DNA from: Guillardia theta CCMP2712
Lineage: Eukaryota; Protista; Cryptophyta
DNA length: 54,328 nucleotides
NCBI RefSeq assembly: GCF_000315625.1
Contig: NW_005434623.1
Coordinates: 410,768 to 465,095, forward strand
Direction of reading: 5' to 3'
Shown here in pieces: positions 12,964 to 52,270 of the stretch. The notes beneath the pieces are model-generated. The model saw only the letters and a list, made by a program, of their open reading frames with translations. It was not told where the DNA came from and searched no databases. The position numbers and the translations under genes were made by a program. The stretch's first letter is position 1, and each line of letters begins with the position of its first letter.

Positions 12964-13063
12964 NNNNNNNNNNNNNNNNNNNNNNNNNNNNNNNNNNNNN
13001 NNNNNNNNNNNNNNNNNNNNNNNNNNNNNNNNNNNNNNNNNNNNNNNNNNNNNNNNNNNNNNN
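12964..13063. other. Assembly gap (100 N) flanked by (CT)n/(CCTC)n
   Basis: Run of N. Confidence 1.
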
Positions 13064-17000: not shown

Positions 17001-17377
17001 TCCTTGGCCGGAGGCTTCGGGGGAACGGGGCGCTGCACCTCCTCCAGGGTCATGGTGGGAGGGATGGCGATGTGATGGCGGCAGGCCTTCCTGCCTGACT
17101 CCTGTCCCTCCGGCGTTATGTCGTAGATCTTCACGCTGCCTTCTCCCGTCACAGGGCACAACTTGGCATCCTCGTTCCTCTTTGACTTCTTCGACTCTGA
17201 AGGTTTCTCCTCCTCCTCCCCCTCCTCCTCCTCCTCGTTGTCCTCCTCCTTGGCTACTGCATCCTCGGCACTTGGTCTCTTCCTCTTCCCCGCTTCCTCT
17301 TCCTCCACTTGTTTGTGTCCACCGGAGCTGTTTTCTTCCTTCTTGGTGAAGAAATCGAAAAGCTCGTCTTCATCCAT
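13664..17377 (-). CDS. MTR4: Nuclear exosome RNA helicase MTR4 (Ski2-like DExH); exons 17377-14639, 14361-14111, 13949-13886, 13767-13664; apparent 1-bp frameshift near 14250
   Basis: AHTSAGKT, SPIKALSNQK, DEIHYMRD, LSATIPN, QMSGRAGRRG, arch/KOW region (WGWGVLV), C-terminal IFEGSVIRCIRRLEEL...KRDIVFAASLYL*. Confidence 0.95.
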
Positions 17378-18711: not shown

Positions 18712-21700
18712 ATGGGGAAGAAGAAAAGCGTGCAGATGTGCTTTCAACTCGCTCTGTGCCTTCTGGTATTAATGGCGCGAGAATGCGCGGGAGCGGACGG
18801 ATACATTGAGCTGACCAAGGATGGGTTCCGCGTGTCCGACATGGTCACGATGCAAAAGGTTCGGCGAGCTGTTGTTCAGTTCTGTGGGTTTGATGGTTTG
18901 TGATCAGGGGATGGCGATCGAGGGTGACCTGGTGATGAACGGGTACTTCCAGTCCTTCAACTTCACGGCAGAGAGCAGGAACACAGCTTGGGGAGGCTTC
19001 TATGATGGCGAATGCACCCCATCGAGAAAGGGAGCGATCAGGTCCTCGCGAACTTGGTTGACTGCTGTCTTGGCGACTGAGCTTGCTTGTCAGGTGGAGC
19101 TATACAATCTTCGAGTCCTGCGACGGCATTTCCTGGAAGCCGCTGAAGCACTGCTCACGAGACTGTGGGTTTCAACTCCCTCCCCCCTACGAGATCTCAG
19201 GCTGCCAGGAGTACAACTGCACCGAGTATTGCTGCCCTAGAGCAGACTCTATGGATTCTTGCCACGTCGTCTCCTCCTCCTTGAGGCTTTCCTCGACGGA
19301 CGTCATTGTCAACGGCTCTTCCAAGTGCGACATGCTTCTGAAGACGATCTGCAACCCCATGACCAACTTAACCTGCACTGAAGTCGAGATTTCACCAATC
19401 CCCTTCGCTACATCGAAGTGGTACACAACCAGTATCGATCCAGCGTTTCAGCAGACTTTCATCGTCCCAGAGTACAGCGCAGTGAACATCTCTAACTCCT
19501 CTGGCGCAGCTCGTCCCGTGCAGCAGTACACTTGCTCCACTCTAGACTACAACTCCAGCGCCTTCGACTATCTGAAGGCCTTGTACAACAGCAGCGGGTG
19601 GTGGAAGGCAGTGCCAGGAATTCCTCAGGACACAAACGCCGACAGCTTGAACTTCTCATGTTTTGACAAGGTACAGAACGCCGGCTTCGCTGCTGCGCCG
19701 ACGATTTTGAAAGGAGCTATTGGCGACGGACCGGGGAACTACGGTGTATATGAGAAGACAAACAAGTTCGGACCAACCATTCAGATCACTCTGTTCAGCT
19801 ACGTGTATGTTAGTGAAGACCCTACTGCTACCATCGATCTCACATTAGTGAACAATCCTCTGGAGGGCTGGGAGGTCGGGAGCGATATCAGGTTTACCTT
19901 CGAAGTCTCAGCTACCATATCAGGAGTGGTCCTGGACCAGTTGACTGCTGTCTTCGCAACAGTGACAACTTTAGACAAGGAGACGATGAAGATTTCTCTG
20001 ACGACTCCTTACACGCCTGACTCCAAGGCTAGTGTATCGACGTCTATCGGAATCAAAGGAGATGCGTCGTTGGTGATCCCGACTTTCTGCGTTCCCTTCG
20101 GAGGAGGCTGCAAGCCTGGCAACTATACCGGAACAAGCTGCGCCTGGAAGATCTCCTCCCCCAAGAGCTCGTACGTTCAGCTTCAATTCCTCAAGGTCGA
20201 GCTTGCAGACAACGTAGACTCAGTCTACGTCTATGACATCACCGGCCTCCCCGTCTACACAGATACCAACTACCTGAATGGAAACAGATCTGACATCGCC
20301 CCGCTTGCAATCTTCAGTGGCAACATGTCCGCAGCAGCGCTCCAGTCAATGCAGAGCAAGCTTATCAGTCCGTATGGCGGCGAGTTCCTCGTCGTGTTCA
20401 ACAGCGGGCCCACTACGTCAGCATGGGGGTTTGAAGCCGTTTACACCCTGATGCCGAGGCTGGGGAAGATGATCGACGAAGGAATTTTCACGAACCTTCA
20501 GTTCTCGATCGCGTTCCTTGAGTACTACAACGCCAATGTCACGAAGTTGATCTCCCAGTCGGCGAAGGGCAGATATGAATCATTGTACGACACAGGGACT
20601 GGGGTTCTGGGGCCTATGACGGAGGCGGAGCAGTGCTTCCGTTGCTGCTCAAATCTCATCCCGACTCACCCTGTAGTGTACCAGGGCCAGGGCTTCCCAG
20701 TCTTCAACATTCGTCCCAACATCGACCAGGTCGGACGGGACGCTGTCGCTACAAAGATGCTCTCGGCCGCGGTAGACTTGTCGGAGATCCCCGACCTCTG
20801 CAGGTACATGGGCTACCTTCCCGAGCACTACTACAGGACCGGTTATATCTCCCGCTTCCCGACCGGTAAGTTGCTGCTTGCTGTAGATAGCGCAGGACTG
20901 ACTGATTCCTCCAAGGGTCGATCAAAGTTCCGACGGCATTCCCGCTGGGCAAGAGGCCAGTCTGGGGAAAGTACGGCAATACCGACCCGTCGGCGTCCTC
21001 GCAGCCAGTGCGGGAGGCGATCGGGTGGGGGTTGAGCCCCGTGCTGGTCGGGTCGAGGAGCAGCTGGTTGAAGGGATGGGGAGACACTGAGGGGGACCAC
21101 GAGGGCGCGCGGTGGTGGGACGGGGATGGGGCCAACGGCAACGCAGAGCCTGACTGGTCGATCGTCTCTCCTCCGAATCAAGTGGTGGACGAAGTTCGAT
21201 TCAACTTTGACCTGGACCACGGGGACGTTCCCCTCTACAGCTTCGTCGACTCTCAGAGGAGGCTGGTGATCTCGAACGCGTTTGCGCTCTCCACACGATG
21301 CGGCCAGCTGGTCAACAGCAGCTGCGGCGTCTCGTGCGGGGTGAGGGGGACAGGGTTGAACATCCTCCAGTGCCTCGACAACATTCCCTTGACACGATGT
21401 GGCCAGCCGGTGGTGGACATGTGCAACAACGACTGCAAGATGTTGGGCGAGCAGAGGTGTAACGACACGGCAGTGGGACTTGGATCAGTTCGCATCGGGT
21501 CCCAGCACCGTATCCCCTCCGGGTACTTCCAGTTCGGGGTCGGGCGGCCGGACAACCTCCACAAGGACAACATGTTTCTCAGCTTTCAGAGTCTGTCAGA
21601 TACGGGGGCGACTCTAGAGCTGCTGCAGCTCATCAATGATCCTTTCGATGTGAGCAACCATATGATGCTGAACGTCTACCAGCTGCAGCAGATCCTTCCA

Positions 21701-24304
21701 TCCAATGTCCACCTCATCCTGAACAGAATCTTTGACAACATTCCTGCCATGAAATGTTCCCTGATTCCTCCAAACTGTGGGCAAACCACGTCAGCCAAGG
21801 GTTACTTCTCTTCCTACCAGCTCCAGAACCAGAGCTGGCCTTTCTGCCCCCTCTACAACACTTTCAACGACCCCATCTGCAAGCCCAACGCCAACCCCAC
21901 GGCTATCACCGTCTCCGACCTCTTCAAGTTCTACGATCGCAACTCCTCAGGCTACCTGGAGCGACCGGAGATCCTGAGCCTCAGCGCGGACTTGGAAAGT
22001 CGGCGGCAGCTGGTCAAGGAGGAGATCTGGTCAAGAGCGACGAGAGCCCAGAGGGATCTCGTTCGCTTCCAGCCATTGCGATCTGCCGCCGGAGACATCT
22101 TCGGTCTGGAGCTTGACAGCCCTTCTTGTCCCTTCCCCGACTTCTGCCTCGAGACGTTTAACACCAACACCATGCGGGTCAGCTCCTCCCTTGAGCTCCT
22201 CGGCGAGTACATCCAGATCGGGCAGAGCCGCTACGGCAACATCTCCAACTGCTCCAACATCAGCTCCACTGAGTTCTGCTACTGGGACGTCAGGCCGGAG
22301 CCCTTGAGCAGAGTCTTCATAGACGGCCAGATCAACGGGGCCTGTCCCGTGCAGATGTCGGCCAACCATGACTCCTTCAGCACTTCCCTGTGCGTGGAGA
22401 GGACGGACAATGAGAATAAGACGCTGCTGCTTCCCGACACCAACGGCATCGTCGTGCTGACCAGCAACCTCGACGTCGTTCCCTTCGTCCCTGGGCTGAG
22501 AGGGAACAGGACTCTGTTCTTCACAGGTGACATGTATCAGGGGAATATGCTTTGGAAGTACGACAAGTTCGTCAACCAAGACCCCAGACCTCCTGCCCCG
22601 AGGATCGACTGCGCCAACGTGCCCTGCTCCACCTTCCGACCTATGACTACCTTCTCCATCTCCTCGACCACCTTGGTCTGGACCTTGATCGACAGGGACG
22701 TGTACATGAGCTTGAAAGACGTGTACTTGCCTTCACTGCCGTCCTTCAAGAAGTACGTCTGCCTGACGGTCTTGTGCGACATCCAGAACGTCATCAACGA
22801 CATGCAGACCAAGTGGTCCCTGACGCTGAGACGAGACGCAGCGAAGCAGCAGGTGACGGTCAGCGGGTCCGCGATCGCGGCCATCAACGGCATTTATACG
22901 TATGTCAACGAGAGCTTGTACACCAACACGTTGGCCAATGGCAGGCAAATCTTCCTCATGAGGCTTCCAGCAAGAGGTTGAGACCTGTTTACAAAGTCAA
23001 TCCCTTCCCTGCTACATCCTACTTCTTCCACTTCCCAGACTTGCTCCTCCCTCCCTCCCTCCCTCCCTCTCTCTCCCTCCCTCCCTCCCTCCCTCCCTCC
23101 CTCCCTCTTTCTACATTCCAGGTGACATTTTTGCTTCCAGACCTCCAGGGAGGCGTTCCGGCCGCGTCTCGCGGCGAGTTCGGAGGGACTTGTGTAGATC
23201 TCGAGAAGAAGTTCGCGCTAGACTTCAACATCCTCAACCGCCGGTGACCTCTCCTCCTCCTCATCTTACCCACAGGCTGTCTGACACCTGCTACAGCAAG
23301 GAGGGTCAGTGTATGGACCTCAAGGTCTCAGTGATGAACTCTATCCCCTACTGCGGACCTGGATGTACCTTGAACGGGTCAGCAAGTTCTTCCTCCTCTC
23401 CCCGCTGTCCTGACGCTTGCCCTGTGCTCAAACAGCGTGACGGATGCGGCGTCCTATGGGGTGAGAGCAGCGTTGTTGTCGGTCTGCTGGTTGTTTGACA
23501 GCTATTCTGCAGCTGAACGAGACGAACGTCTGCTGTGACTGCGGGGGAGGAAGCACTCCTGCCCACGTGTATGACTTCTTGAGGGTGTACTACATGGAGG
23601 TGAGCGCTACTGACGCAAGGAGGAGGAGAAACGGAAGGGGAAAGAGAGGGAGGGGAGAGACGAGGAGGGAGGGAAGGGAGAGGGAGAGGGAGAGGGAGAG
23701 GGAGAGGGAGAGGGAGAGGGAAAACGGAGTCACTAAAGGAAGGGAAGGCAAAGGAGGAGGAGGAGGAGGAGGAGGAGGAGGAGGGTTCTATCTCACAGAA
23801 TATGACAGGGCAACTGGGATCCAGTCTACAACGGCAGCAGCGGCGCGTGGGGTCAATGGCAGACGCTGTCTACCGTACGCAAGACTCTCTTCAACCTGGT
23901 GGAGCCGCAGCCGAGTTGCTGTACAAGTGAGCGACGAGCCTTCCCTGCTTCTCTTCCTCACTCCTCCCACCCCAGGCGGAGTAGCCGCGAACCCCATGGC
24001 ATGCTCGGGATGCTCGCTGGACAGGTCAAGCTGAGGTTGTGCAGCGCAGCTAGACGGCTGACTCGTGCGGCAGTTACACTACCATGCTTGACTACCTCAC
24101 CCTGCACTCCAACGCCGAGATCAACGTCTTGAACATGGCCACTCAGGTGATGCTACTGGCGTCGTTGACCTGGTTTTGACTTTCGACGACTCCAGCAAAC
24201 GACCAGCGGCGGTCAGTTCCCTGTGACAGGCGTCGAGTCTTGCTACCTCTGTTGCCACCTTCCTGCAGCAGCTGAAGTCAAACCGAAGTCTGCCGCGGTA
24301 TGAG

Positions 24305-24354
<50 letters not shown>

Positions 24355-27300
24355 AGATCCTGATCCTGCTCCTGCTTTCGCTCTCGCTCGTTACCCCTCG
24401 CTCCTCCTCTTCGTGACATCGATCTTCAGGGGGTTAACGTCGCTTCCTCCATGTGCGAGTGGGTGGAGGTGTCTGGGTTGTACGTCCAGAAGAACCTGGA
24501 AGGTTTCTACCAGCAGATGTACCCGCTCGGCGATCTTGACCCAGGCAGCCAAGGACGACCAGTGTACCGCCACAGCTCCGGTCCTTCCCTTGTCTATCCT
24601 AAAACTCACACTGAAGGCTCGTCCTCCAGGTCGCTTCTACCTCTTCTTCCTCGCAAGGGCCTGCACCCATCTCAACAAGGCCCTCTGCCCTGCCCAGCAG
24701 CCCGCCTGGGTCGTGGCTGACACGTTGGGAACGGACTCGGCGCGCTTGATCGCGTACCAGGTCACCGACGGGCCAGGGCAGGTGACGACGGAGTGGCAGG
24801 AGTTCGACGGTTCCCTATACGCGCAGCGCAACTTCACGCTCGAGAGCCCCATCACGGTTCAGTGCACGCAAGGCAATGTCGGGCAGCAGAGCGAGCGGCC
24901 GATGCCGCTGTGGTCAGAGCCAGTGCACGAGCGACTGCTCAACTATACGACGGGCGTGGGTTTCGTGGATCCATCCGAGCATCACAAGCTCACACTCCCC
25001 GACACCTTGGTGCCTTGACTAGCTCCCGTCTTCTCCTCTTCTTGCGATGGCTGCTCCAGCGCTCCTTCTCTCCTGCTCCTTCTTCCTCCATCCCTTGCTC
25101 ACTCTTTCTCGTCTCTTCCCTCTCTCCTCTCCTTCCCTCTTCCTCTCCCTCCCTCTCCCCGTCATTCCGTTGCCCTTCCCATCGTTTGACCGCTTCGTCT
25201 CTGTCACTTACATCTCCCTCAGGGAACAGTCGTCGCCACCGGCGCATCCGAGCTGATCACGAGGCTCGGAACCCTCGTCTCTCCCATCGTCTCGCAGGCC
25301 AGCGCGCAGGACCTGACGAGGGTTCAGTTTGGGGTGGAGTGGCAGTACGTGAATGCAACGGAGAGGACCAACACCTTGAGCGGGAGGTACGTCATGGACA
25401 TGGCGTACTGCTACTTCAACAGGAGCGTCAGTCTCACTGCCAAGAGCAGGTAGCTCCTCCACCTCATGTCTTCAGTCACTGTGTTGACGCATGTTGCCTG
25501 CAGCAAGACCGTCGATGTTTGTGACCCCAGGACGGCGTTTGCCCTTCCTCTGGCCGATCGCTTCCTCTATGACTGCCAGCACCTCTTCTCGCTCGCTGGG
25601 CTCGACAACTCCAGTGTCATCATCCTCCAGTCTGACTGCGACAACTGTCTCTTCTGGTTCCCTATCAAGGAGGTTCTAGTCGGCAGCTTCTGCAAGGACA
25701 GTCTCGGTCGGATCACTAACATTACCTGCGAAGTTGGCGTGTCCAAGTGCGATTGTGTAGACGCGTACGAGCCGTTCGACGAGGTCGAGTACGCCAACCG
25801 CCTTCCAAACAACCGATCGAAGATCGTCCTCAGCGAGAATGTCTCGATCGAGTACGAGGTTGTGAAGGTCTGGGAGGGAGAGACGTTTTCAGTTACAGCC
25901 AGCTACCGTTCCAACAGCACCTACAAGCTCTGCCCCGCCTCCCCTTTGGCTCAGTCGACCTTCTCCTTCGGGTTTGCCCGCATCGAGACTCAGGTGGAAG
26001 CGAAAGTCGCAGTCGGCACCATCACACTTGACGAGGCGGTGGCCTCCCTCAACCAGCAGCTCGATCTCCAGCTGGGCAATCGGACCGTCCTGATCCGCTT
26101 CTCGCTCGATCGCCCCGGGCTGGGCTGGCGCACGCACGAGGCCGGAAATCCCATCCCCATCCCTGACCTGTTGGACCGGCAGAGGAATCAGACGGCGCTT
26201 TTACCAGGAGGAGAGGCGTACGATGGGTACGGGAGGTGCGGGGATCTCGACTCGGCCTCCTCCTACGACCCGGGCAAGTTCTTCTGCCCCTCGACGTCGC
26301 GAGTTGTTCAGCTGCAGACAGCAGTCTTCAACGCCTCGGGTCGGAGGTTTGCCAGCGACCTTGTTGCCGTCAAGTGGCACTCCAGCGCTCAGAGCTCGCT
26401 CCCTGCCAGCGACATCCCAGTGACGAAGCTGCTCAACTTCTACAGCATCGAGCAGTACGGACTGAGCGGGAGCGAGATCACGTTCCCTCTCGCGCAGGCA
26501 GCCAACACCTCCAACAGTGTCAAGGGCTCTACAGCAGACGAGCGCGGACAGCCGCTCATGAACAATACCGTGCACGTTCCCAGCTCTGCCGACGGAGTTG
26601 TGCTGTCAACGGGGAACCTGGTCGACATCAACAACTTGACTAGCTCGATGACGAGCTTCGCCGTCAACGCGCTCAAGGAAGCCTCCGCCGCCAAGGCCGT
26701 GCAGCTGCACGACTGGCTTGACTTCGGCCAGTCAGTGTCGGGCTACTCCTACATCGGGAGAACCTCGAGGATCTTCAACCCGATCTCTTACCCGGGGCCC
26801 GGCCGGGAGCTGGTGACAGCAGCCGAGCAGGTGCACCCCTACCTGGCCGACTTCGACCTGCAGGCTCTCCATGCTGCACTCAAAGATGACGTGGTGGACG
26901 GGGTAATGAAGAGCATGGGGACTCTGGTGGAGAAGCCCCCTTGGACGGCAGCCAGGGCTCAGATGCTCCAGCTGTTCTCCAGCAAGATCAGCGCGACGTT
27001 TGCGGGGTATGCGACCAGCGCCTTCTTCAGCAGGCTGGAGGAGTACGCGGCGGGAGGAGGGGCAGTCACTGGCATCGACTTCTTCGGCCTCAATTCCAAG
27101 GCCGTCAGGCTCGGCCAGTCCAGGTTCTCGTCTGGCGTCAGGCTGGTGCCGGACAGCCCGGAGGGAGTGGGGAAGCTCGCGCTGAACCTGAGCTCGCTGC
27201 CGAGCTCGAGCTCACAGGTGAGAGCGGGAGGAGAGTCGACGAGATGAACTGAAGGAGGTCCAGGTGTCCAAGAGGACCATCTTGAATTTCGAGCAGGTCA

Positions 27301-27407
27301 GTCTTGCAAGTTGTGATGTGTTGCTGTTGTTGCTTTGACGATGACAACGGATGTTATGTGGAAATGTAGATTATGATGATGACAACGACGATGACAATGA
27401 CAAGGAA

Positions 27408-27440
<33 letters not shown>

Positions 27441-30400
27441 AGTGGTGGTGGTGGTGGTGGTGATGACGATGATGATGATGACAAAGAGTGGTAGAAAATT
27501 CTTGACTGATAGTCGTCGCAGTTTCAGAAGCATCGTCCGGGGCTCGATAAATTCACTGGAAGCTCCTGGTTTGGCAGCAAGCAGTATCGACAGGACCAAG
27601 GAAGATTCGCCAATATTTCCTTCCTCAAAGTGCCGGCAGTGCAAGGTAATTCTCCTCCTTCTTCCTTTCTTCCCCTCCTCTGTCCACCTCGCCCCTCTCC
27701 CCTCTCCCCTCCTCTCCCCTCCTTCCCCTCTCCCCTCTCGCCCCTCTCCCCTCCTCTCCCCTCTCCCCTCCTCTCCCCTCCTTCCCTTCTCCCCTCCTCT
27801 TCTGCCAGGTCTGATTCTGCCGCGCAGGTTCGATCGTCACCACGGGGAACCTGGAGGACATCTCGGCGAGCTCAGGAGCGATCACGAGCGTCCACGTTAG
27901 TAACGACGTTGTGTTCCATGACACCGTCAGGCTGGGAGACAACTTCTTCCTGGGTGACCAGCTCCATATGCTCATTGCGCAGACGAGCGTGTGCGACGGG
28001 GTCTTGATGCCAGCAACCTCCCTTGCTGTCGGGGAGGGCATCGGGAGGGGGACGTGCTTCAAGAGCTTCAAGGGTGCTGTTAGCTGGGAGTCAGCCCAGC
28101 AGAGCTGCCGGGAGTGGGGAGGCTTCCTGGCCGTCTTCGCTGACCCGCAAACTCAAAGTTTCGCTCGCTCCAGGCTTAACTTGCAGGGGAGCAACTGGGT
28201 TGGGCTGTCCAGCAGAGACTACCCCACCGTGTGGGTGTGGAGGGGGCAGGGGATACCCGACGTGTACTTGAGCTCGAGTCAGATCAGCACGTCGCTGCTG
28301 ATGGATGCCACGGTGTCGTTCAGCAGGAGGTGCGGGGCCATGGACAGCAACAGCAACTGGAACGCCTTTGACTGCTCTTCCTCCCTTCCCTACGTCTGCC
28401 AGCGGCCTGATATGCCACTTGCCGCCATGAGCTACTCAAAGGGGTACGAGACGTGCGGCAACTCGTTCCATGCTGAGGGCTGCGGCAACTCGGCGACGCA
28501 TCTAGGGTTTCAGATCAAGGGGTTGGTGGACCCCAACATCTCTTTGATCGAGTTCCCCGTTGTCAACTCAGGAGTCGTCATTACCACCGGCAATCTACAG
28601 GACTTGACCTTCCTCGATCTTGACTACCTGTACCTCAACGGTACCCGAGCTTCTTGATCTCTTGCTCGTTTGACGTTTTTCTTTTGCAGCATCTGCCAAC
28701 TTGATGGGGCAGGTCACCCTTGGGTCCAACATCACGCACTACAACAAGCCGTTCCCCATCACCCCGATCTCTTTCCAGGGATACCTCATTGGAGACTGTA
28801 AGTTCAACTCCTCCTCCTACTTCTCCTCTAGTTTTCCCTCCTCCTGCTTCCCTTCCTCCGCCCACAACCTACATCTTTCCTCCTCCATCTTTCCTCCTTC
28901 TTCTTCTCCTCATGATGAGGATGATGATGATGATGATCATCATCATCATCTCAATCACCACAATCATCGCCACCACCACCACCACCACCACCATCGTAAT
29001 GTTATCATCATCATCACCATCACCATCACCATCACAATCCTCCTCCTCCTCCTCCTCCTTCTCATCATCATCATCATCATCATCATGCACCACCACACTT
29101 CATCCTCATCATCCTGATCTCCCTCGCAGTTGTCTTCAAGAACAGCATGGCTGACAGCTACAGCACCATCATCTTCGAGCCTCCCGATGGCCCTCGCACC
29201 ATTGTCTTCCCGGACGAGAGCGGTACCGTCATCACCACCGGCAACCTGGAGGACATTGACAACAACGTCGGGCTAAGGGGGCAGGACCCCATCATTGTCC
29301 ATCACACTCTTATAGACTATACCACCACCCTACAAGGGGTGGAGGTTCCCAACCCCTGGCTGATCGTTGACTTCGCCGCCGCTGGCTCCCGCGAGTCTCT
29401 TTCCCTCGGCCTCGTCCCCGTGCCGCTCCCTCCAGGATCCTCCAAGGGCAGGTGACGCTGCTGCCGTCCCCTCTTCCTTCTTACCTCCTTCTTCCTCCCT
29501 CCTCTTCCCCTCCCCCCCCCCCACCTCCTCCTCCTACCCCTTTCTCACTTTCCCCTTCCTCTCACTTCCTTCCCCTTGACCTCCCTCCTCCTCTTGACTC
29601 CAACCACAGTACGACCGTCGACTCCTCCTCCCCACGCGGCATCTGGTATCTCGTCGACCTGGGGCCCGACGGCAAGTTTCGAGACGGAGACGACATAGCC
29701 TACTACATGGAAAACACAACAAACTTGGGAGGGGGAAGGAGGCCGCTGACCGGCTGGACTGTCCCCTGCAGCCCCTTCGACACTATCACCATCGGCGTCT
29801 GCGCTCCCACCGACTGGGTCGACAGCTCCTACGACTTTCTCCACTGGGAGGAGTACCACGTTGATCTCGTCGGAGCCTCTCCTCGTCCTAGGATCGTTCC
29901 TGCTGGCACCAGCGTCTGCCCCTCAGCTTCGAACGATCAGGCCTTCATTGCCGGCGAGACTCTCCGCTATGCCACCCCCACCCAGCCGCTCACGACCTGG
30001 GACGACTCGCTCTACGAACCTTCCTTCCGCAACTGCAGCTACGTCATCTCAGGCGCTGGGTCCGCGGAGGTGAACGGGAGGTACGTGTACGCGGGGAAGA
30101 ACGACAACGTGGCTCGCTTCCGCAAGGAAGGGTCGAACATCTACCTGTTCCGATGGGGCAGCATGAACCAACGTATCACCTTCCCCGATGCCACAGGTGA
30201 CGTCGTGCTTGTTCCTCTCTCCTGCTGACGGTGTGCTGGGACAGGTATCGTCATCACGACCGGCAACCCCAACGACCTTGTTTTCACCAAGATCTCCCTG
30301 CTCAGTTTGGACCTGGACGCTGACAACTACGTCGGGTCCCTTGTGTCTCCCCTCACTGACTCCGGGTTCACCGTGATCTCCTTCGACAAGTACGAGTCCG

Positions 30401-33400
30401 TCATCGTCGGCAAGATGCAGTTCGCCAACCGAGCATGCCAGGGGTCGACTTGCTACCCCTTCCCCACGACAGCCCTGCACATCATTCCTCCTACCGTCAA
30501 GGACCTGACCACCATCGGCACTGCCGACTGGATCCCGGAGTTGTGCCGCGGGAAGGGCGTGCAGGAGCAGCTGGAGAAGTGCAACTACTGCACAGCAGGG
30601 GACGAGTGCGCATACAAGAGAGAGCTCCTGTTCCCCGACGCTAGCGGCACCGTCATCACCACAGGGAACATGCAGAACCTCCCGGCCGTCGCCATCCCCT
30701 ACAACGCACTCTCCGTCGGGGCCAACGCTGCCATGGAAGGAGACGTGACGCTGGGCAACCCGACGCCCGAGCTCGTGACGCCCGGCCTGCTGTTCAAGGC
30801 CCCCGAGTACCTGAGGGAGAGCAGGACCGTCACGTGCGACGGGTTCGAACACCACGACGAGAGGTGTGTCAGGGGGTCCGGGCACTTGGACGTGAACGAG
30901 GACGGGATCAAACGCAATGCCGTCATGATGTACACCAGCATGGCGGGAGAGACTGGGCTGACCTTCAAGCCTGCCTTCGACGTCGCTTCCAAGGTCCAGT
31001 ACCAGGGAGGCACCAAGTTCGCTGCCCCTGACATGGAAGGGATCGATGCGGCTCTAGAGTTCTTCCTGACCCAGGGCTCGCAGAGGCTCAAGATCCCCGT
31101 GCAAGACTCCAGCTCCTACGTACTCAACAAGGACTTCACCAGCACCCACAACGTCCTCCTGCACTCCCTGCGGCCCTCCAGGCGCGACATGTACCTTGGA
31201 GCCCAGGATATCGTGACTGTCCCCCAAGGATGGTTGATGCAGCTGGACGTGCTGCTCGCCAACCGCACCTACTGCTTCCTTCAGGGAGCTCTGTGCTCCT
31301 CCTCATCCTCCTGCGACAGCCCGATGCTCCAGAGCCCTTGCTCGTCCGAGCTCTACCGCTATGACATCCTCCTCGTGGCCAACACAACCTCTGACAAGTG
31401 TCTCCTTGCGGGCGTCAAGAGCGACTCAAAGATTGACATGCTGCAGAACCTGACGAGTCTCGTAACCTCCGCGTCGTCCATTCCCCTTGTCGTAACCAGG
31501 AAGAGCGTCCGACAACTCGAGCTGTTCGGATCGAGCTGGATTCTCAGCTCGATCTGCCGGGAGGACGGACAGTCTGCGAGTCCTATGTTCGGGTCCAGCT
31601 CATTGCAAGGTACAGTCAGGTTCTCAGCTCGCTCGCCCCTCGTCAGCCCTGCAGCTGGGCAATATGCCCTGCCCGAGGTGATCGCGTGGGTGAACAACAG
31701 GACCAACGACTTTGCGGGGAGCTTCGGAGCAGAGGTGAAGTTCAACTTAAGGGAGCCGGGCAAGTACGAGGACGGGGAGCTTGCGGCCCGGCCGTTCGTG
31801 GAGGTCATGGGCATGTTTGACAGCAGCGTCCAGAGTTTACAGAACTCGCTGACACTGCGCAGCAACTCGAACTTCATGCGCCTCCTCGGGTTCGATGCTG
31901 ACAGCGTCGCCCTCGTGCCTCCCTCGCCCTCCTCCTGCCAGTTTGACGACCAGGGCTGCTCCAGCTACCTCCGATCGAAGTCCTGCAACGTGTACGACAC
32001 GTGTCGGTTCCCGTTCATTACCAGGAGCACACAGGCACTCAATGTTTCCTCCCTTCCCCTCGAAGACTCCGTGCTCGCCTTCGTGCAGACCGTAACGCCC
32101 GAGCGCTGCTTCTCGATCTTGCAGGAGCAGAGCATAAACATCACCGGTTCGCAAGGCATCCATGACAGGCAGGAGCTGCGCAGGTGGCTGATAGAGCGAG
32201 GAGCCTTCCTGCCGACGCTCAGGAGAGGAGACGCCTACGAGACGCCTGTACCCTCCAACCTCCCGCAAGAGCTGTCAAACGTGAGCGACTGCAGTCTCAG
32301 TACGCATGTCACCATCCCCGCCGGCTCCTTCCTCGCCTTCGACTACAGCAGCCGCCCCATCTCCCCCTCCCTCCTTAGGATCGCTCCCTGCAGCCCCTCC
32401 AGCAGCATCGTCCAGTGGGTCCTCGAGGGTTCCAACTCAGGCCCGCACGAGGGGTTCCAGCCCGTCAACCTGCTTGTCAACCAGCAGATGGACAGCTGGG
32501 GAGGGGCGTACGTCTCGAACAAGGTTGACACGGTGTCAACGCAGACGTACAAGTGGCTGAGGATCGTCCCGACCCCAATGCAGGAGGCATGCTACGCCGA
32601 GGTCGAGGTGCACGAGGGGGAGGTGATGGTGGACATGGCGAGGCAGACGTGCGGGAGGAGGAGCTTCTTCATCAACTCTTCCTCCCTCGTCGATCCGAAC
32701 AACAACCTGACCGCATTCGTCCTCAAGTGCGCGTCCTACAACCTCTTCCCCAGGATCGACAGGATGGAGGACGTTGTCCTCGGATACGACAGCGGCGTCG
32801 TCCTGACAACTGGAAACTTCGAGGATGTGACCAGCGATGCTGGGGCGATGACGAGCTTGAGCGTCAAGTACGACGTGGAGATCAGTGGAGACTTCTCGGT
32901 TGGGACGGGAGCAGGAGCAAGAGGGAGCGGTGACATGGACTCTTCAAATCCTTCCATGGTGTTCAACTCTCTGATCAAGGACTCGCTCTCGTTCAAGTTC
33001 TCCTCAGCAGAGCAGACTCGAACGACGGTGCAGGTGGACCAGGGCATCGGAGACGCCGTCTTCCTCCTCGAGGACATCTCGGGCACGATCCTGACCGCCG
33101 ACCGCATGTCCAACCTCAACGATCTCAACGTTCTGACGCAGGGGACCGTAGCAGGCATGCTGAGCACCCTCGGAGACGTTCAGTTCGGGGATGTGAACGC
33201 TGCCTCCTCCATCTCCCTCCTCAGCCCCATCAGCGGGAGGGAGGCGATGAAGTTCTCCGGCAAGTCGCACGCCAGCGGCACGAAGACCATCCTGTCTCCC
33301 TCCAGCCTCAGCCTCCCCTCCTCCCTCCTGGTCCTGCCGGACGCATCGGGCTCGCTGCTGACAGCAGGAAACTTTCCCTCCACTATCTACAACGTCACGT

Positions 33401-35184
33401 TCGAGGGGAGACTGGAGGCAGCTGGTGGGATCTTGTTCGAGCAGTCGGTCAAGCTCGGGGACGTCGCGAGGCCGCTGGGGCTGAACTTTGACAACTCGTA
33501 CGTCAAAGTGCCGCAGGGCCTCCAGTTCCGCTCGTCGACCTCCAAGGAGGGCAGGACGATCCTGCACGTCGAGGAGCCGTCCAAGCTGCAAACTCTGCTG
33601 CTCCCGGATGCCTCTGGCACTATCCTGACCACCCGAGAGGTCTCTCAGATCCCCTTCGACCGCCTGAGGGTCCTGGAGGGGATTGACGTGACGGGGGCCG
33701 CAAGGCTGGAGGGGGAGAGGATCAGCATCGGGTCCTCTACAGTCGCGACGTCCCTAGAGCTGAACTCCAACATCCTTGGCAAGTTTCCGCTCTCCTTCGA
33801 CTGCGGGATGAACCTCAACGGCGAGCAGCAGCCCTGCCTCACGTTCGAAATGCCGACCTCATCCTCGTCCTCCACCATCACCTTCCCCGACTCCAGCGGC
33901 GTTGTCATCACTAGCGGCAACCTCCCCAACCCCCTCGTGACCGACTCCTCCTTCTCCCTCCACACAGACTCCCTCGTCGCCAGCTCCTCCTCCAGCATCT
34001 TCATCGGGCTGGACGCCGGCAACCCGGTCCACCCGGGCAGCTTCCTGTTTGTGGACTCGCTCCCTGCTGGGCAGGAGCTGAGGACTGACGGGGAGAACCA
34101 GTTCAAGGTCATCGCTAGAGGAGGCGTCTCGCTCGTGACTGGCTACAGCCCGACGGGCAGAGAGATCGGGGCCCAGCTGCTGCCGGGCTCCGGGTCCTGG
34201 TCGTCACTGAGCGATGGCAGCATGAAGGAGAGGGTGGAGAGAGTGGAGGGGAGAAGGATCGCAGAGAAGCTGGTGGGGGTGAACATCAGCGAGTGGAGCT
34301 ACATCGGTCAGAGCCAGAGACACGTCGGGCCCATGGCACAGGTCCCTCCTCCTCCTCCTTCTCCTCCTGTCCTGCTCCTCCTCCTGCTCTTGCTCCTCCT
34401 ACTCCTACTCCTAGTTCTCCTGATTCTCCCCTCGTTCGTTCCTGACATACTACTTCCCTCTCTCATCTCATCCTCCGCTCTCTTCTCCTCTCGCCTCTCT
34501 TCCCTCTGCTCCGTTCTCCTCCATCCTGCTGCTTCGCTCGCTCCTCTCCCTCCTCGAGTTCTTCGCTCACTCTTCACTCGCAGGACATCGCCAGGGCCTT
34601 CGGGTTGGGTGCGGACGAGTCGAGAATCGACGGGATGGACGCCGACGGGCTTGTGCTGGCGGCAGTGACTGGAACAGGAGCAGTGATGGTAAGGAGAGGA
34701 AGGGAGTTGGTCGTGGTCGAGGATGAAAGGGGGAAAGGATGGAAAGGAAGGGGGCGAGGGGAGAGGGGTAGTGGAAGGGATTGAAGGAGATGGGGGAAAG
34801 GGAAAGAAGGGAGGGAAGAGGAGGAGGTCACTGGAGGAGGGAGAGGAGGGGGAAGGAGGAACACAGGAGGGAGGGTCCTGACGGCGGAGCAGGAGGAGAG
34901 CTCGAGGAAAGTGGAGCAGCTCAAGGAGAAGCTGCTGGAGATTGAGGAACGGATGACAACACAGACGAAGAGGTGAGAAGAAAGAGGAGGGAAGGGGGAC
35001 GAGAGGAAGGGAGAGGTGGGGAGAGCGAGAGGAGGAGGAAGAGAAGTAGGAGGAGGAGGAGGAGGAGGAGGAGGAGGGAAGTGACGGGAGGTGCAGGTTG
35101 GAGAAGCAACGGAGCATCCTTGAGGAGCAACAGAGGAGGCTAGAGAGGATCGTGATGAAACTCTCAGCAGCTCCTGTAAGCTGA
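18712..35184 (+). CDS. Giant (roughly 4,000+ aa) secreted mosaic fibre-like protein with C-terminal peptidase-S74-type intramolecular chaperone and coiled coil
   Basis: Signal peptide MGKKKSVQMCFQLALCLLVLMARECAG. ORFs 19083, 21008, 24413, 25466, 27911, 29147, 29452 and 30307 are joined by GT-AG introns and share one repeat motif. CUB ~20118-20447, EF-hand DRNSSGYLERPE ~21935, C-type lectin ~28050-28403. Ends SWSSLSDGSMKE..WSY..RHVGPMAQ|DIARAFG..DADGLVLAA, then coiled coil, stop 35182-35184. The single-gene model is inferred, not every junction was phase-checked. Confidence 0.8.
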
Positions 35185-51991: not shown

Positions 51992-52270
51992 AGGATGAGA
52001 GCAGGCGAAGATGGAAGTGTCAAGAGTAGGGGAGAAGGAAGAAAGGAGGAAGAAAGGATTGAAGAAACAAAGTTCAAAGATGCTCGTTCAGTTTGTCTCT
52101 CCTCAGTTGGCATCGCAGCTGGACAGGCGGAGTTAAGGAAATGAAGAGAGTGCGATCAAGTGAACGAGGAGGAAGAAGCGTGGAGGAAAGATATGGGGGG
52201 GGGAGTGGGGGAGGCGGGGGAAGAAGAGGAGGGGCAGGAGGCAGTCAACAAGCTTCACTGCTGGTCAACT

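What the first reader, a model, noticed from the sequence alone, without database searches (positions are those of the whole stretch)
18712..35184. Giant secreted algal fibre protein ending in a phage-type self-cleaving S74 chaperone
Seen: a signal peptide, over 4,000 inferred residues, and a C-terminus S-D-G-S-M-K (Ser codon 34210, Lys codon 34225) followed by WSY, RHVGPMAQD, DADG and a coiled coil. Known: peptidase S74 / intramolecular chaperone domains use a Ser/Lys(+5) dyad to trimerise and then release phage tailspikes and fibres (e.g. K1F endosialidase). They also occur in MYRF-type transcription factors and in Bdellovibrio adhesive fibres. Inference: the alga secretes a very long homotrimeric, autoprocessed fibre, for example a prey- or surface-binding adhesin, a flagellar-hair or periplast fibril, or an extrusome-associated filament. 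I know of no characterised eukaryotic secreted structural protein of this type.
Basis: partly seen in the sequence, partly recalled or inferred. Interest (0 to 1): 0.9.

Follow-up and report, generated by a model that had tools for sequence, protein, structure and literature searches.

The report
Giant secreted phage-like fibre gene
A nuclear gene with many introns in this protist encodes a roughly 4,360-residue secreted protein built like a phage tail fibre, with sugar-binding-type modules and a self-cleaving S74 trimerisation chaperone at its end; such fibres are known from phages, bacteria and protist viruses but not as host genes of this lineage.

Summary
A + strand gene runs from ATG 18712 to TGA 35184. 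It has about 20 exons and encodes about 4,360 residues.

- **C-terminus.** Ser 34210 and Lys 34225 form the SDxxxK dyad, which aligns to position 1 of Pfam Peptidase_S74. A 242-nt intron splits the domain. The spliced sequence scores 118.7 bits against an HMM of 119 database S74 ends; shuffled versions score 1.4 or less.
- **One gene.** Single-ORF homologues of 3,800-5,500 residues align collinearly from 18.8 to 34.7 kb. One homologue is a 15.4-kb polyadenylated mRNA of another organism, probably a eukaryote.
- **Secretion.** Its signal-peptide-like N-terminus matches exons 1-2 of the window.
- **Shaft.** Twelve LPDxSGTxxTTGN repeats are homologous to phage tail-fibre repeats (hhalign 98.5%).
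- **Inserted modules.** A C-type lectin domain and a CBM32-like domain are embedded in the shaft.
- **Host locus.** The upstream neighbour is an MTR4 helicase, GC3 is host-like, and there are two paralogues whose S74 intron positions differ.

Weak points:
- The sampled RNA gave only 7 reads and no splice joints.
- The junction at 27.2-27.8 kb cannot be closed by one canonical in-frame intron.
- The exons between 22.9 and 25.2 kb are uncertain.

The type is not unprecedented. Bdellovibrio MAT fibres, fibres of cryptophyte polinton-like viruses, and candidate Amoebophrya glycofibril proteins all end in S74/ICA. I rate this a new variant of a known kind. First-stage notes of this scan also flag S74 modules on other pieces of this genome.

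The parts
18712..35184 (+). Whole gene: start codon to stop codon, about 20 exons, about 4,360 residues in my model
   Evidence: An open GT-AG path exists. Single-ORF homologues give collinear tblastn matches from 18815 to 34673.
18712..18792 (+). Signal peptide (27 residues; basic n-region, hydrophobic core, CAG|A cleavage-type site)
   Evidence: Read directly from the sequence. It aligns to the signal-like N-terminus of the 5,000-residue homologue P0169. No predictor was run.
18712..18858 (+). Exon 1, followed by a 49-nt intron (18859-18907)
   Evidence: The splice recreates ..ELTKDGFRVSDMVTMQK/GMAIEGDLVMNG.., which matches P0169 residues 30-58.
18908..19041 (+). Exon 2, followed by a 52-nt intron (19042-19093)
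   Evidence: The junction GAIR/WSY matches GAVRWSI in P0169.
19094..20865 (+). Exon 3: Cys-rich N-terminal region with a CUB-like stretch (CUB is my reading; there is no Pfam hit)
   Evidence: 657-codon open segment. tblastn matches at 24-31% identity to five homologues. Pfam found nothing.
20916..22929 (+). Exon 4. It contains the most conserved block of the family (20915-21571, 43-47% identity, 44 invariant columns, many of them Cys) and the first shaft motif at 22412.
   Evidence: The AF2 model of the block failed (pLDDT 29).
22930..25222 (+). Stretch whose exon structure is uncertain: about five short exons among low-complexity introns. The last intron, 25010-25222, is supported.
   Evidence: Only the dynamic-programming path supports the short exons; there is no homology here. 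Intron 25010-25222 recreates LTLPDTLGTVVATG and the downstream match to homologues.
25223..27217 (+). Exons 25223-25449 and 25504-27217, with a shaft motif at 26588
   Evidence: tblastn matches at 25208-25426 and 26507-26773; motif HMM.
27218..27827 (+). Unresolved junction. No single in-frame GT-AG intron joins the two flanking exons.
   Evidence: Donor and acceptor enumeration. The model bridges it with a doubtful 118-nt ATG-repeat exon (27370-27487).
27828..28640 (+). Exon holding a C-type lectin domain (28079-28406) between two shaft motifs
   Evidence: PF00059 at 49.4 bits, E 8.5e-13, profile positions 3-107 of 107. Shaft motifs at 27833 and 28568. By my reading of the sequence, no EPN/QPD motif is evident, and WNA stands where WND is usual.
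28690..30196 (+). Exons 28690-28830, 29130-29451 and 29610-30196, with shaft motifs at 29183 and 30166
   Evidence: Dynamic-programming model; tblastn matches at 29105-29305 and 30163-30315; motif HMM.
30245..34341 (+). Largest exon (about 1,365 codons): shaft, CBM32-like module, tandem shaft repeats and the first half of S74
   Evidence: 1,479-codon open segment. About 30% identity over about 600 residues to the giant homologues.
32305..32635 (+). CBM32 / F5-8 type C-like beta-sandwich
   Evidence: AF2 model with mean pLDDT 67 and core blocks at 80-89. Foldseek top 24 hits are CBM32, F5/8 type C or related carbohydrate-binding modules, E 4e-6 to 5e-5, target TM 0.6-0.73. Family consensus ..GLDLG..VR..P..RWLRY..AE.E.H.G.
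32791..33930 (+). Tandem shaft repeats of about 90 residues (motifs at 32791, 33328, 33577 and 33862, plus a degenerate one near 33060)
   Evidence: Motif HMM. The family alignment has invariant P-D-x-x-G-T columns. hhalign to a phage tail fibre: 98.5% probability, E 3.3e-15.
34198..34341 (+). S74 domain, first half: GSGSWSSL / SDGSMK ... RHVGPMAQ. Catalytic Ser is 34210-34212 and Lys is 34225-34227.
   Evidence: PF13884 positions 1-47. Custom S74 HMM. Ser, Asp and Lys are invariant in the S74 alignment A4.
34342..34583 (+). Spliceosomal intron (242 nt, GT..AG, CT-rich) inside the S74 domain
   Evidence: Sequence. Homologues and both paralogues run straight through this point. Splicing adds 55 bits.
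34584..34688 (+). S74 domain, second half (DIARAFGLGADESRIDGMDADGLVLAAV..)
34890..35184 (+). Two terminal exons (34890-34972 and 35097-35184) encoding the coiled-coil tail and the stop codon. Borders are inferred.
   Evidence: Sequence and frame. Homologues carry a heptad tail that forms the trimer axis in the predicted complex.

Best explanation
This is one nuclear gene with many introns. It encodes a secreted modular fibre protein of about 4,360 residues.

**Layout, N to C.**
- A 27-residue signal peptide.
- A conserved Cys-rich N-terminal region.
- A long shaft marked by 12 phage-tail-fibre-type repeats (LPDxSGTxxTTGN), interrupted by a C-type lectin domain and a CBM32-like domain.
- About five tandem repeats of ~90 residues.
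- A Peptidase S74 intramolecular chaperone with the SDxxxK dyad (Ser4226, Lys4231).
- A coiled-coil tail.

**Proposed mechanism.**
- Shown here: the sequence features and the homology.
- Inferred from the family's established behaviour: after entry into the ER, three chains associate at the C-terminal S74/coiled-coil module. This registers and folds the intertwined trimeric shaft towards the N-terminus. Ser4226, with Lys4231, then cuts the chain before Ser4226 and releases a 135-residue chaperone fragment. The mature fibre of about 4,200 residues is exported.
- Inferred use: outside the cell the fibre acts as an adhesive, glycan-recognising filament, held by its conserved N-terminal region and binding through the lectin-type modules near its distal end.

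The fibre parts are of bacterial or phage type but have resided in this genome for a long time. The gene is almost silent in the culture RNA sampled, so it is probably used only under certain conditions or life stages.
For: **S74 domain.**
- Pfam position 1 falls on the Ser codon 34210.
- The spliced domain scores 118.7 bits against a custom HMM; shuffles score 1.4 or less.
- All 10 sampled training proteins carry PF13884 at 36-82 bits.
- Seven giant homologues (P0003-P0009) score 25.8-35.6 bits and the shorter P0017 22.7, all above the 22-bit cut-off.
- The dyad is invariant in alignment A4.
- The S74 profile hits the MYRF ICA structure 7dc3 (E 2.9e-4) and the phage chaperone 3gud (E 5e-3).

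**One gene.**
- Collinear matches to five single-ORF homologues.
- The N-terminus matches P0169.
- An open GT-AG path exists.
- Shaft motifs span 22.4-33.9 kb: 7 strict matches against 0.025 expected, and 12 by HMM.
- A homologue is a full-length polyadenylated 15.4-kb mRNA with the same 5' end in four runs.

**Trimer.**
- Three copies of P0169 residues 4720-5000 score 0.86, against a best control of 0.00. The runs agree in at least 78% of contacts and pLDDT is at least 70.
- The mark was reached by 21 of 30 solved homomers and 0 of 23 single chains, and a pass may come from the model's memory of solved S74 trimers.

**Shaft.** hhalign to a phage tail fibre gives 98.5% probability.

**Lectin-type modules.**

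**Host gene.**
- The upstream neighbour is an MTR4 helicase.
- GC3 is 0.80 against 0.83 for MTR4.
- There are two paralogues whose S74 intron positions differ.

**Extracellular character.** 108 Cys, 57 N-x-S/T sequons, and no hydrophobic segment outside the signal peptide and one doubtful exon.
Against: - **No transcript evidence in this organism.** Seven reads among 19.8 million, several in predicted introns, and no joints. Other runs guessed to be RNA hold none of the 3' 6 kb.
- **Unresolved junction.** The junction 27218-27827 cannot be closed by one in-frame GT-AG intron. The exons between 22.9 and 25.2 kb are guesses.
- **Pfam threshold not tested on the window's own domain.** Pfam scores exon A alone below its cut-off (18.6 against 22). 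I did not submit the spliced sequence to Pfam because it has no reference.
- **Chemistry inferred.** Cleavage, trimerisation and secretion are inferred, and the trimer test used a homologue.
- **Lectin function unproven.** The C-type lectin domain shows no evident EPN/QPD plus WND sugar-binding motif (my reading of the sequence). The CBM32-like model has only moderate confidence (pLDDT 67).
- **No anchor identified.** The AF2 model of the N-terminal block failed.
Confidence: 0.68

Rival explanations
1. The locus is a decaying or silent relic: a once-functional fibre gene that no longer yields a full-length protein in this strain.
For: RNA is almost absent. The junction at 27218-27827 needs a doubtful bridging exon or a GC donor. 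One DNA contig of run X3 carries an extra C after 26154.
Against: Open segments of 1,479, 691, 657 and 597 codons are intact. The catalytic dyad and family-invariant residues are kept. A complete open path exists. Runs X1 and X2 lack the extra C.
Confidence: 0.13
2. It is a viral structural gene: the fibre of an integrated polinton-like virus or giant virus, rather than a host protein.
For: Polinton-like viruses (PLVs) of cryptophytes encode S74-ended fibres of up to 3.9k residues. Language-model neighbours include Nucleocytoviricota S74 clusters, which is a lead only. The shaft repeat is of phage type.
Against: The gene has about 19 spliceosomal introns. It has a signal peptide. GC3 equals that of the adjacent MTR4 helicase gene. 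No viral hallmark domain was found in flanking ORFs. At 16.5 kb the gene alone is as large as a small PLV. The paralogues lie on two other contigs; their surroundings were not examined.
Confidence: 0.05
3. The interval holds two or more separate genes, and the S74-bearing one lacks the signal peptide.
For: There is no RNA continuity data. No homology covers 22.6-25.2 kb. One junction is unresolved.
Against: Five single-ORF homologues cover both sides collinearly, and one of them is a single mRNA. Shaft motifs occur on both sides of every doubtful stretch. Two shorter paralogues keep the same N- and C-terminal ends.
Confidence: 0.06
4. It works like MYRF: the S74 domain releases a functional N-terminal part from a membrane tether for signalling, rather than maturing a fibre.
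For: MYRF is the best-known eukaryotic use of this domain, and the S74 profile's best solved match is the MYRF ICA domain.
Against: No transmembrane segment follows the S74 domain; only a coiled coil and the stop codon follow. No DNA-binding domain was found by Pfam. The N-terminus carries a signal peptide, and the body consists of fibre repeats.
Confidence: 0.02

Closest known systems
Bdellovibrio bacteriovorus MAT (mosaic adhesive trimer) fibres, S74 subgroup, e.g. Bd3182 (PMC10769870)
   Same: Cell-encoded rather than virion-encoded. Both have a signal peptide, a conserved domain just after it, a long intertwined trimeric shaft, lectin-type binding modules (one MAT tip has a C-type lectin fold) and a C-terminal S74 with SDxxxK that cleaves itself. 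The nearest S74 relatives of the window's domain are bacterial chromosomal genes of this general kind.
   Different: MATs are bacterial, have about 1,000 residues and have no introns. This protein is four times longer, eukaryotic, carries its lectin modules inside the shaft, and has a different shaft repeat. Homology to the MAT N-terminal domain was not tested.
Phage tail fibres and tailspikes with the C-terminal intramolecular chaperone (K1F endosialidase 3GW6, T5 pb1 4UW8, phi29-like neck appendage 3GUD)
   Same: A trimeric fibre followed by an S74 chaperone with a Ser/Lys dyad. The shaft repeat is homologous to the repeat of podovirus-like tail fibres (phrog_38058) at hhalign probability 98.5%. 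The S74 profile hits 3gud.
   Different: There is no virion-attachment N-terminus; a signal peptide stands in its place. The C-terminal 117 residues of exon A found no tblastn match in 50,697 cultured phage genomes, and the last 560 residues hit no PHROG family. Introns and eukaryotic domains are present.
Fibre proteins of polinton-like viruses integrated in cryptophyte genomes (PMC12220804)
   Same: Large modular proteins (up to 3.9k residues) with carbohydrate-binding modules and a terminal Peptidase_S74, found in protist genomes, cryptophytes among them.
   Different: Those lie inside 14-40 kb viral elements and carry laminin_G_3, collagen or adenovirus-fibre modules. This gene sits next to a housekeeping helicase, has about 19 introns and a signal peptide, and contains none of those modules.
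TLP-12 glycofibril and its candidate Amoebophrya precursors (bioRxiv 10.1101/2025.09.30.679562)
   Same: Giant eukaryotic proteins proposed to form extracellular triple-stranded fibrils, with a C-terminal ICA (S74) domain.
   Different: TLP-12 is built from more than 1,000 GSxxSx7 dodecapeptide repeats in alveolates. This protein has no tandem pair of that repeat. It uses ~90-residue phage-type repeats with globular inserts.
MYRF / Dictyostelium MrfA membrane-bound transcription factors
   Same: A eukaryotic nuclear gene using an S74/ICA domain for trimerisation-dependent self-cleavage. This is the best solved-structure match of the S74 profile (7dc3).
   Different: MYRF has an Ndt80-type DNA-binding domain before the ICA and a transmembrane helix after it. 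Neither is present here.

Membership tests
Peptidase S74 / C-terminal intramolecular chaperone (PF13884) | Match to the Pfam model above its gathering score (22 bits) | tested here: inconclusive
   Exon A alone scores 18.6 bits, E 0.0023, positions 1-47 of 58. The spliced sequence has no reference and was not sent to Pfam. Seven giant homologues score 25.8-35.6 bits and the shorter P0017 22.7. The spliced window sequence scores 118.7 bits against an HMM of 119 S74 ends, of which 10 of 10 sampled pass Pfam.
Peptidase S74 / C-terminal intramolecular chaperone (PF13884) | Catalytic Ser and Lys five residues on (SDxxxK) | tested here: met
   S-D-G-S-M-K at 34210-34227, with Pfam position 1 on the Ser. 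Ser, Asp and Lys are invariant in alignment A4 and nearly invariant in A1.
Peptidase S74 / C-terminal intramolecular chaperone (PF13884) | Sits at the C-terminal end of a trimeric fibre or spike and forms a trimer itself | tested here: met
   The domain lies 135 residues from the end, after tandem fibre repeats. The homologue trimer scores 0.86 against a best control of 0.00, contact agreement at least 78%, pLDDT at least 70 (21 of 30 solved homomers and 0 of 23 single chains reach the mark). This is a prediction on a homologue and may reflect memory of solved S74 trimers.
Peptidase S74 / C-terminal intramolecular chaperone (PF13884) | Autoproteolytic release of the chaperone after folding | not testable with these tools
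   Needs expression of wild type against Ser-to-Ala and Lys-to-Ala variants.
Phage tail-fibre shaft repeat (as in phrog_38058 proteins) | Repeated ..F.G....t.L.v.dP....itLPD.sGTvvTtgNl.. units | tested here: met
   hhalign of the family profile against a phage tail fibre: probability 98.5%, E 3.3e-15, 288 columns. That phage protein scores 167 bits to phrog_38058. The window has 12 repeats.
Phage tail fibre (as a virion part) | N-terminal virion-attachment domain and a phage genome context | tested here: not met
   The N-terminus is a signal peptide. The neighbour is an MTR4 helicase. The last 560 residues hit no PHROG family. The query found no match in cultured phage genomes.
Polinton-like virus fibre protein | Encoded inside a 14-40 kb element with capsid, ATPase and integrase or polymerase genes | tested here: not met
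   Flanking ORFs give MTR4 helicase, PDZ and UVR domains and no viral domain. The gene has introns, and GC3 is host-like. Capsid proteins of such viruses are poorly covered by Pfam, so this is not exhaustive.
MYRF-type membrane-bound transcription factor | Ndt80-type DNA-binding domain before the ICA and a transmembrane helix after it | tested here: not met
   No such Pfam hit. No hydrophobic segment after the S74 domain.
Bdellovibrio MAT superfamily | Signal peptide followed by the conserved ~130-residue beta-rich MAT N-domain | not tested
   A signal peptide is present. No MAT sequence was fetched for comparison. The resemblance is architectural.
TLP-12-type glycofibril precursor | Long arrays of GSxxSx7 dodecapeptide repeats | tested here: not met
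   No tandem pair of the motif occurs in 4,360 residues.
C-type lectin domain (PF00059) | Pfam match above the cut-off; Ca-dependent sugar-binding motifs EPN/QPD and WND | tested here: inconclusive
   The fold match is met: 49.4 bits against a cut-off of 22.6, over the full profile. By my reading of the sequence, the sugar-binding motifs are not evident and WNA replaces WND.
CBM32 / F5-8 type C | Beta-sandwich fold matching solved CBM32 modules | tested here: met
   Foldseek E 4e-6 to 5e-5 and target TM 0.6-0.73 for the top 24 hits. The model pLDDT is 67, which is moderate. There is no Pfam hit, and ligand binding is untested.

The most novel reading that the evidence does not exclude
Host-encoded fibres of phage-tail-fibre type, folded and matured by an S74 chaperone inside the secretory pathway, may be an unrecognised class of protist extracellular filament. 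On this reading they were acquired from bacteria or their viruses, expanded into small gene families (three here), enlarged to 4,000-5,500 residues and fitted with eukaryotic lectin modules. They would be deployed only under particular conditions, for example to capture bacteria, to mediate cell-cell adhesion in a life stage not seen in culture, or to act as decoys for viruses.
Probability: 0.3. Interest if true: 0.75.

Novelty: new variant of a known kind. Interest (0 to 1): 0.6.

Why it matters
S74-ended trimeric fibres are the recognition organs of phages and of predatory bacteria. Among eukaryotic host genes, the domain's only well-characterised role is in MYRF-type transcription factors.

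A host gene family with many introns that keeps the whole fibre design (phage-type shaft repeat, lectin modules, self-cleaving chaperone) behind a signal peptide would show three things:
- a complete prokaryotic or viral adhesion device was taken over by a protist;
- the eukaryotic secretory pathway can fold and process it;
- it can be scaled up to over 4,000 residues.

It would also give a concrete, testable candidate for surface fibrils of unknown composition in protists. It adds a second lineage, with a different repeat chemistry, to the recent proposal that alveolate glycofibrils are made from ICA-ended giant proteins.

Tried and rejected
- **Pfam on large exons.** No family except a sub-threshold EF-hand. 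Pfam on exon B alone found nothing.
- **Solved structures by phmmer.** The window's last 200 residues of exon A and P0169's last 301 residues gave no hit. The 560-column family profile A1 also gave none. Only the S74-only profile A4 connected to solved ICA domains.
- **Cultured phages.** tblastn found no match. PHROGs on the window's last 560 residues found none.
- **Viral contigs.** The single-protein scan found nothing. The profile scan found only distant shaft relatives (22-50% identity over the best segment; 22-27% where 240 or more residues aligned) in phage-like contigs.
- **RNA evidence.**
It returned 7 reads and no joints.
  - Runs X1-X3 proved to be genomic DNA. So the RNA evidence neither supports nor refutes the gene model.
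- **AF2 of the conserved N-terminal block.** It failed with pLDDT 29. The language-model atlas search on that block gave only weak leads.
- **Identifying the organism behind the 15.4-kb mRNA.** A paper search for its run numbers found nothing.
- **Gene model.** The homology-weighted dynamic-programming model mis-set the first two introns. I corrected them by hand from the P0169 alignment.
- **Apparent GC-0.31 island at 50-52 kb.** It is an assembly gap of 965 N, not a feature.
- **Spliced C-terminus.** I did not type it into Pfam, fold or complex tools because it has no reference. The trimer test therefore used a natural homologue.

Full report
**Observation**

The window is part of an 87.1-Mb, 669-contig assembly. 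On the + strand, open segments in alternating frames tile the interval from 18.7 to 35.2 kb.

At 18712 an ATG opens MGKKKSVQMCFQLALCLLVLMARECAG/ADGY. This has a basic start, a hydrophobic core and small residues at positions -3 and -1. An in-frame stop lies 27 nt upstream.

The last large open segment (30229-34665) contains ..GSGSWSSLSDGSMKERVERVEGRRIAEKLVGVNISEWSYIGQSQRHVGPMAQ. The Ser codon is at 34210 and the Lys codon at 34225.
- A GT follows at 34342 and an AG ends at 34583.
- The next exon (34584-34688) reads DIARAFGLGADESRIDGMDADGLVLAAV.. .
- Two further exons (34890-34972 and 35097-35184) encode a heptad-rich tail ending at TGA 35182-35184.

**Is the C-terminus an S74 domain?**

- Pfam aligns position 1 of PF13884 to the Ser codon 34210. 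Exon A alone covers only positions 1-47 of 58 and scores 18.6 bits, below the 22-bit cut-off.
- The spliced sequence has no reference, so I did not type it into Pfam. Instead I built an HMM from the S74 ends of 119 database proteins retrieved by an exhaustive search. All 10 that I sampled carry PF13884 at 36-82 bits.
- The spliced window sequence scores 118.7 bits against this HMM. Exon A alone scores 63 bits, and 200 shuffles score 1.4 bits or less. The alignment runs without a gap across the exon junction.
- This training set was selected by similarity to the query. The test therefore shows membership of that S74 subfamily, not independent discovery.
- Ser, Asp and Lys of SDxxxK are invariant in a 16-sequence S74 alignment.
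- A profile of that alignment hits the solved MYRF ICA domain (7dc3, E 2.9e-4) and a phage neck-appendage chaperone (3gud, E 5e-3).
- Seven giant homologues (P0003-P0009) score 25.8-35.6 bits in Pfam and the shorter P0017 22.7, all above the cut-off.

**Is it one gene?**

The exhaustive search found 3,141 relatives. The best are proteins of 3,793-5,478 residues encoded as single ORFs.

tblastn of five of these against the window gives strictly collinear matches from 18815 to 34673.

The 5,000-residue P0169 begins with its own signal-like peptide, followed by WVALSKDGYVV... This aligns to exon 1 and exon 2 of the window once a 49-nt intron is removed, and the next junction (GAIR/WSY) matches after a 52-nt intron is removed.

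P0169 is carried on RNA-seq contigs from at least four runs. All have the same 5' end, and one ends in poly(A) about 160 nt after the stop codon. So in another organism, probably a eukaryote (giant-virus mRNAs are also polyadenylated), the family is expressed as a single mRNA of about 15.4 kb.

Other homologues lie on metagenomic contigs where the whole gene is present with a few frame breaks, as expected for genes with few introns.

A dynamic-programming search finds an open path with GT-AG introns from 18712 to 35184. With hand corrections from the homologue alignments, my model has 20 exons and 4,360 residues.

A shaft motif recurs 12 times between 22412 and 33862 by a motif HMM. A strict pattern occurs 7 times against 0.025 expected in shuffles.

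**Weak points of the model**

- *Short exons at 22930-25222.* No homologue covers this stretch, except that intron 25010-25222 recreates a shaft motif.
- *Junction at 27218-27827.* The exons on either side of this interval cannot be joined in frame by a single GT-AG intron.
  - Only GC donors or a bridging exon work.
  - The bridging exon chosen by the program is an implausible ATG-repeat stretch.
  - The RNA run gave 7 reads among 19.8 million, several in predicted introns, and no joints.
  - The three other runs were genomic DNA.
  - Other runs of the same species label, guessed to be RNA, hold none of the 3' 6 kb.
  - Expression in this organism is therefore not shown. A silent or decaying copy remains possible.
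  - Against that, four open segments of about 600-1,480 codons remain intact and the catalytic and invariant residues are conserved.

**Anatomy**

- *Signal peptide and N-terminal region.* After the signal peptide comes a Cys-rich N-terminal region. Its core block (20915-21571) is the most conserved part of the family, at 43-47% identity with 44 invariant columns. The AF2 model of this block failed.
- *Shaft repeat.* The family consensus is ..GxFPLxFDG....t.L.v..P....ITLPDxSGTxxTTGNxP.. with a period of about 90 residues.
  - A profile of the last 560 residues aligns to a tail-fibre protein of a podovirus-like metagenomic phage with probability 98.5%, E 3.3e-15.
  - That phage protein scores 167 bits to phrog_38058, 'tail fiber protein', and lies next to a ribonucleotide reductase gene.
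- *Globular modules in the shaft.*
  - A C-type lectin domain lies at 28079-28406 (PF00059, 49.4 bits, full length).
  - A beta-sandwich lies at about 32305-32635. Its model (pLDDT 67) matches CBM32 and F5/8 type C modules, with Foldseek E from 4e-6 and target TM 0.6-0.73.
  - By my reading of the sequence, the lectin domain lacks an evident EPN/QPD plus WND motif. Its ligand type is therefore open.
- *Extracellular character.* The protein has 108 Cys and 57 N-x-S/T sequons. It has no hydrophobic segment apart from the signal peptide and the doubtful exon.
- *Predicted processing.* Cleavage before Ser4226 would leave a mature chain of about 4,200 residues and release a 135-residue fragment.

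**Trimer**

Three copies of the last 281 residues of the homologue P0169 are predicted to form an intertwined trimer.
- The score is 0.86 against 0.00 for the best of three controls. The runs agree in at least 78% of contacts, and pLDDT is at least 70.
- The mark was reached by 21 of 30 solved homomers and by 0 of 23 single chains.
- The contacts after the S74 domain follow a heptad spacing, as in a three-stranded coiled coil.
- A pass may reflect memory of solved S74 trimers. It shows likeness, not binding.

**Host gene or virus?**

Polinton-like viruses integrated in cryptophyte genomes encode S74-ended fibres of up to 3.9k residues (PMC12220804), so this rival had to be examined.

- The immediate upstream gene (14636-17377, - strand) is an MTR4-type exosome helicase. 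Other flanking ORFs give PDZ and UVR domains and no viral domain.
- GC3 is 0.80, against 0.83 for the helicase gene.
- The gene has about 19 introns.
- The genome holds two shorter paralogues with the same N- and C-terminal ends, on contigs C61 and C38.
  - Their S74 introns lie at other positions, and both read straight through the window's AQ|D junction.
  - This points to a long residence in the genome, with introns gained after duplication.
- A fourth, unrelated S74 protein lies on contig C94.
- The nearest relatives of the S74 domain (38-50% identity over the last ~105-125 residues) are bacterial chromosomal genes beside housekeeping operons. Cultured phage genomes gave no match.

I conclude that the fibre parts are of bacterial or phage type and that the gene is now a host gene.

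**How it most likely works**

The S74 family is established as a C-terminal module that trimerises, templates folding of the preceding triple-stranded fibre and then cuts itself off at the Ser of SDxxxK. This has been shown for phage K1F endosialidase, T5 pb1, MYRF and Bdellovibrio Bd3182 (and the references cited there).

By analogy, the algal chains would enter the ER, trimerise from the C-terminus, fold towards the N-terminus, self-cleave and be exported as a very long filament carrying lectin-type modules. All of these steps are inferred.

The closest working analogue is the Bdellovibrio MAT family. It shares the signal peptide, a conserved N-domain, a trimeric shaft, lectin-type tips and, in 13 of its 21 members, an S74 end.

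Near-silence in culture argues against an abundant constitutive structure such as flagellar hairs, periplast or extrusomes. It favours conditional use instead.

**Novelty**

- A 2025 preprint assigns the TLP-12 glycofibril to ~20,000-residue Amoebophrya proteins with a C-terminal ICA domain.
- That fibril is built from dodecapeptide repeats, which are absent here.

A host-encoded giant fibre with many introns, phage-type shaft repeats, a C-type lectin domain, a CBM32-like domain and an S74 end has not, as far as my searches reach, been described. I rate it a new variant of a known kind, with interest 0.6.

Other first-stage notes of this scan flag the shaft repeats and the intron-split C-terminal module on this same stretch, and S74 modules on other pieces of this genome.

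Noticed in passing
window 50557-51521 and 12964-13063: Runs of N (965 and 100 bases): assembly gaps. The apparent GC-0.31 island at 50-52 kb and the long ORFs listed across it (49971-51998 +, 50455-51678 -) are artefacts of the gap.
   Followed up: yes
window 14636-17377 (- strand): A 914-codon exon of an MTR4/SKI2-type exosome RNA helicase (DEAD, Helicase_C, MTR4 beta-barrel, stalk, DSHCT), lying directly upstream of the fibre gene and divergent from it.
   Followed up: partly
G000:C61 about 109.3-116.7 kb (-) and G000:C38 about 529.9-541.6 kb (-); loci L016-L018, L020-L023: Two shorter paralogues of the fibre gene with the same N-terminal start and the same shaft-plus-S74 end. The C38 copy keeps the dyad as SDARSK. 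Their S74 introns lie at positions different from the window's.
   Followed up: partly
L001 (G000:C94:201938-205105), ORF 1153-3168 (-): A further S74 protein of this genome with a strong Pfam match (64-68 bits) and no other recognisable domain in the 672-residue open frame. It is not a member of the fibre family described here.
   Followed up: partly
window 26154: One low-depth DNA contig of run X3 has an extra C behind this position, inside a large exon. Runs X1 and X2 do not have it. It is probably a read or assembly error, but it would shift the frame if real.
   Followed up: no
window introns, e.g. 22930-23275, 27218-27827, 28831-29129, 34342-34583, 34689-34889: The longer introns are low-complexity DNA: CT-rich, GA-rich, ATG/ATC repeats, and CAC repeats that read as His runs. 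A second class of introns measures only 48-54 nt. The public DNA contigs break at the long ones.
   Followed up: no
L008 6001-9895: In a bacterial metagenome contig, two S74-ended proteins (841 and 455 residues) sit in tandem among housekeeping genes with no phage genes around. This is an example of the cell-encoded bacterial fibres closest to the alga's S74 domain.
   Followed up: no
window about 21917-21976: An EF-hand-like loop (DRNSSGYLERPE) in exon 4. Pfam EF-hand_6 scores 16.8 bits, below its cut-off of 25.
   Followed up: no
L004 15619-17196 (-): The RNA contigs that carry the 5,000-residue homologue run on into a convergent 525-residue ORF with no Pfam match. This suggests overlapping 3' ends of neighbouring genes in that organism.
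   Followed up: no
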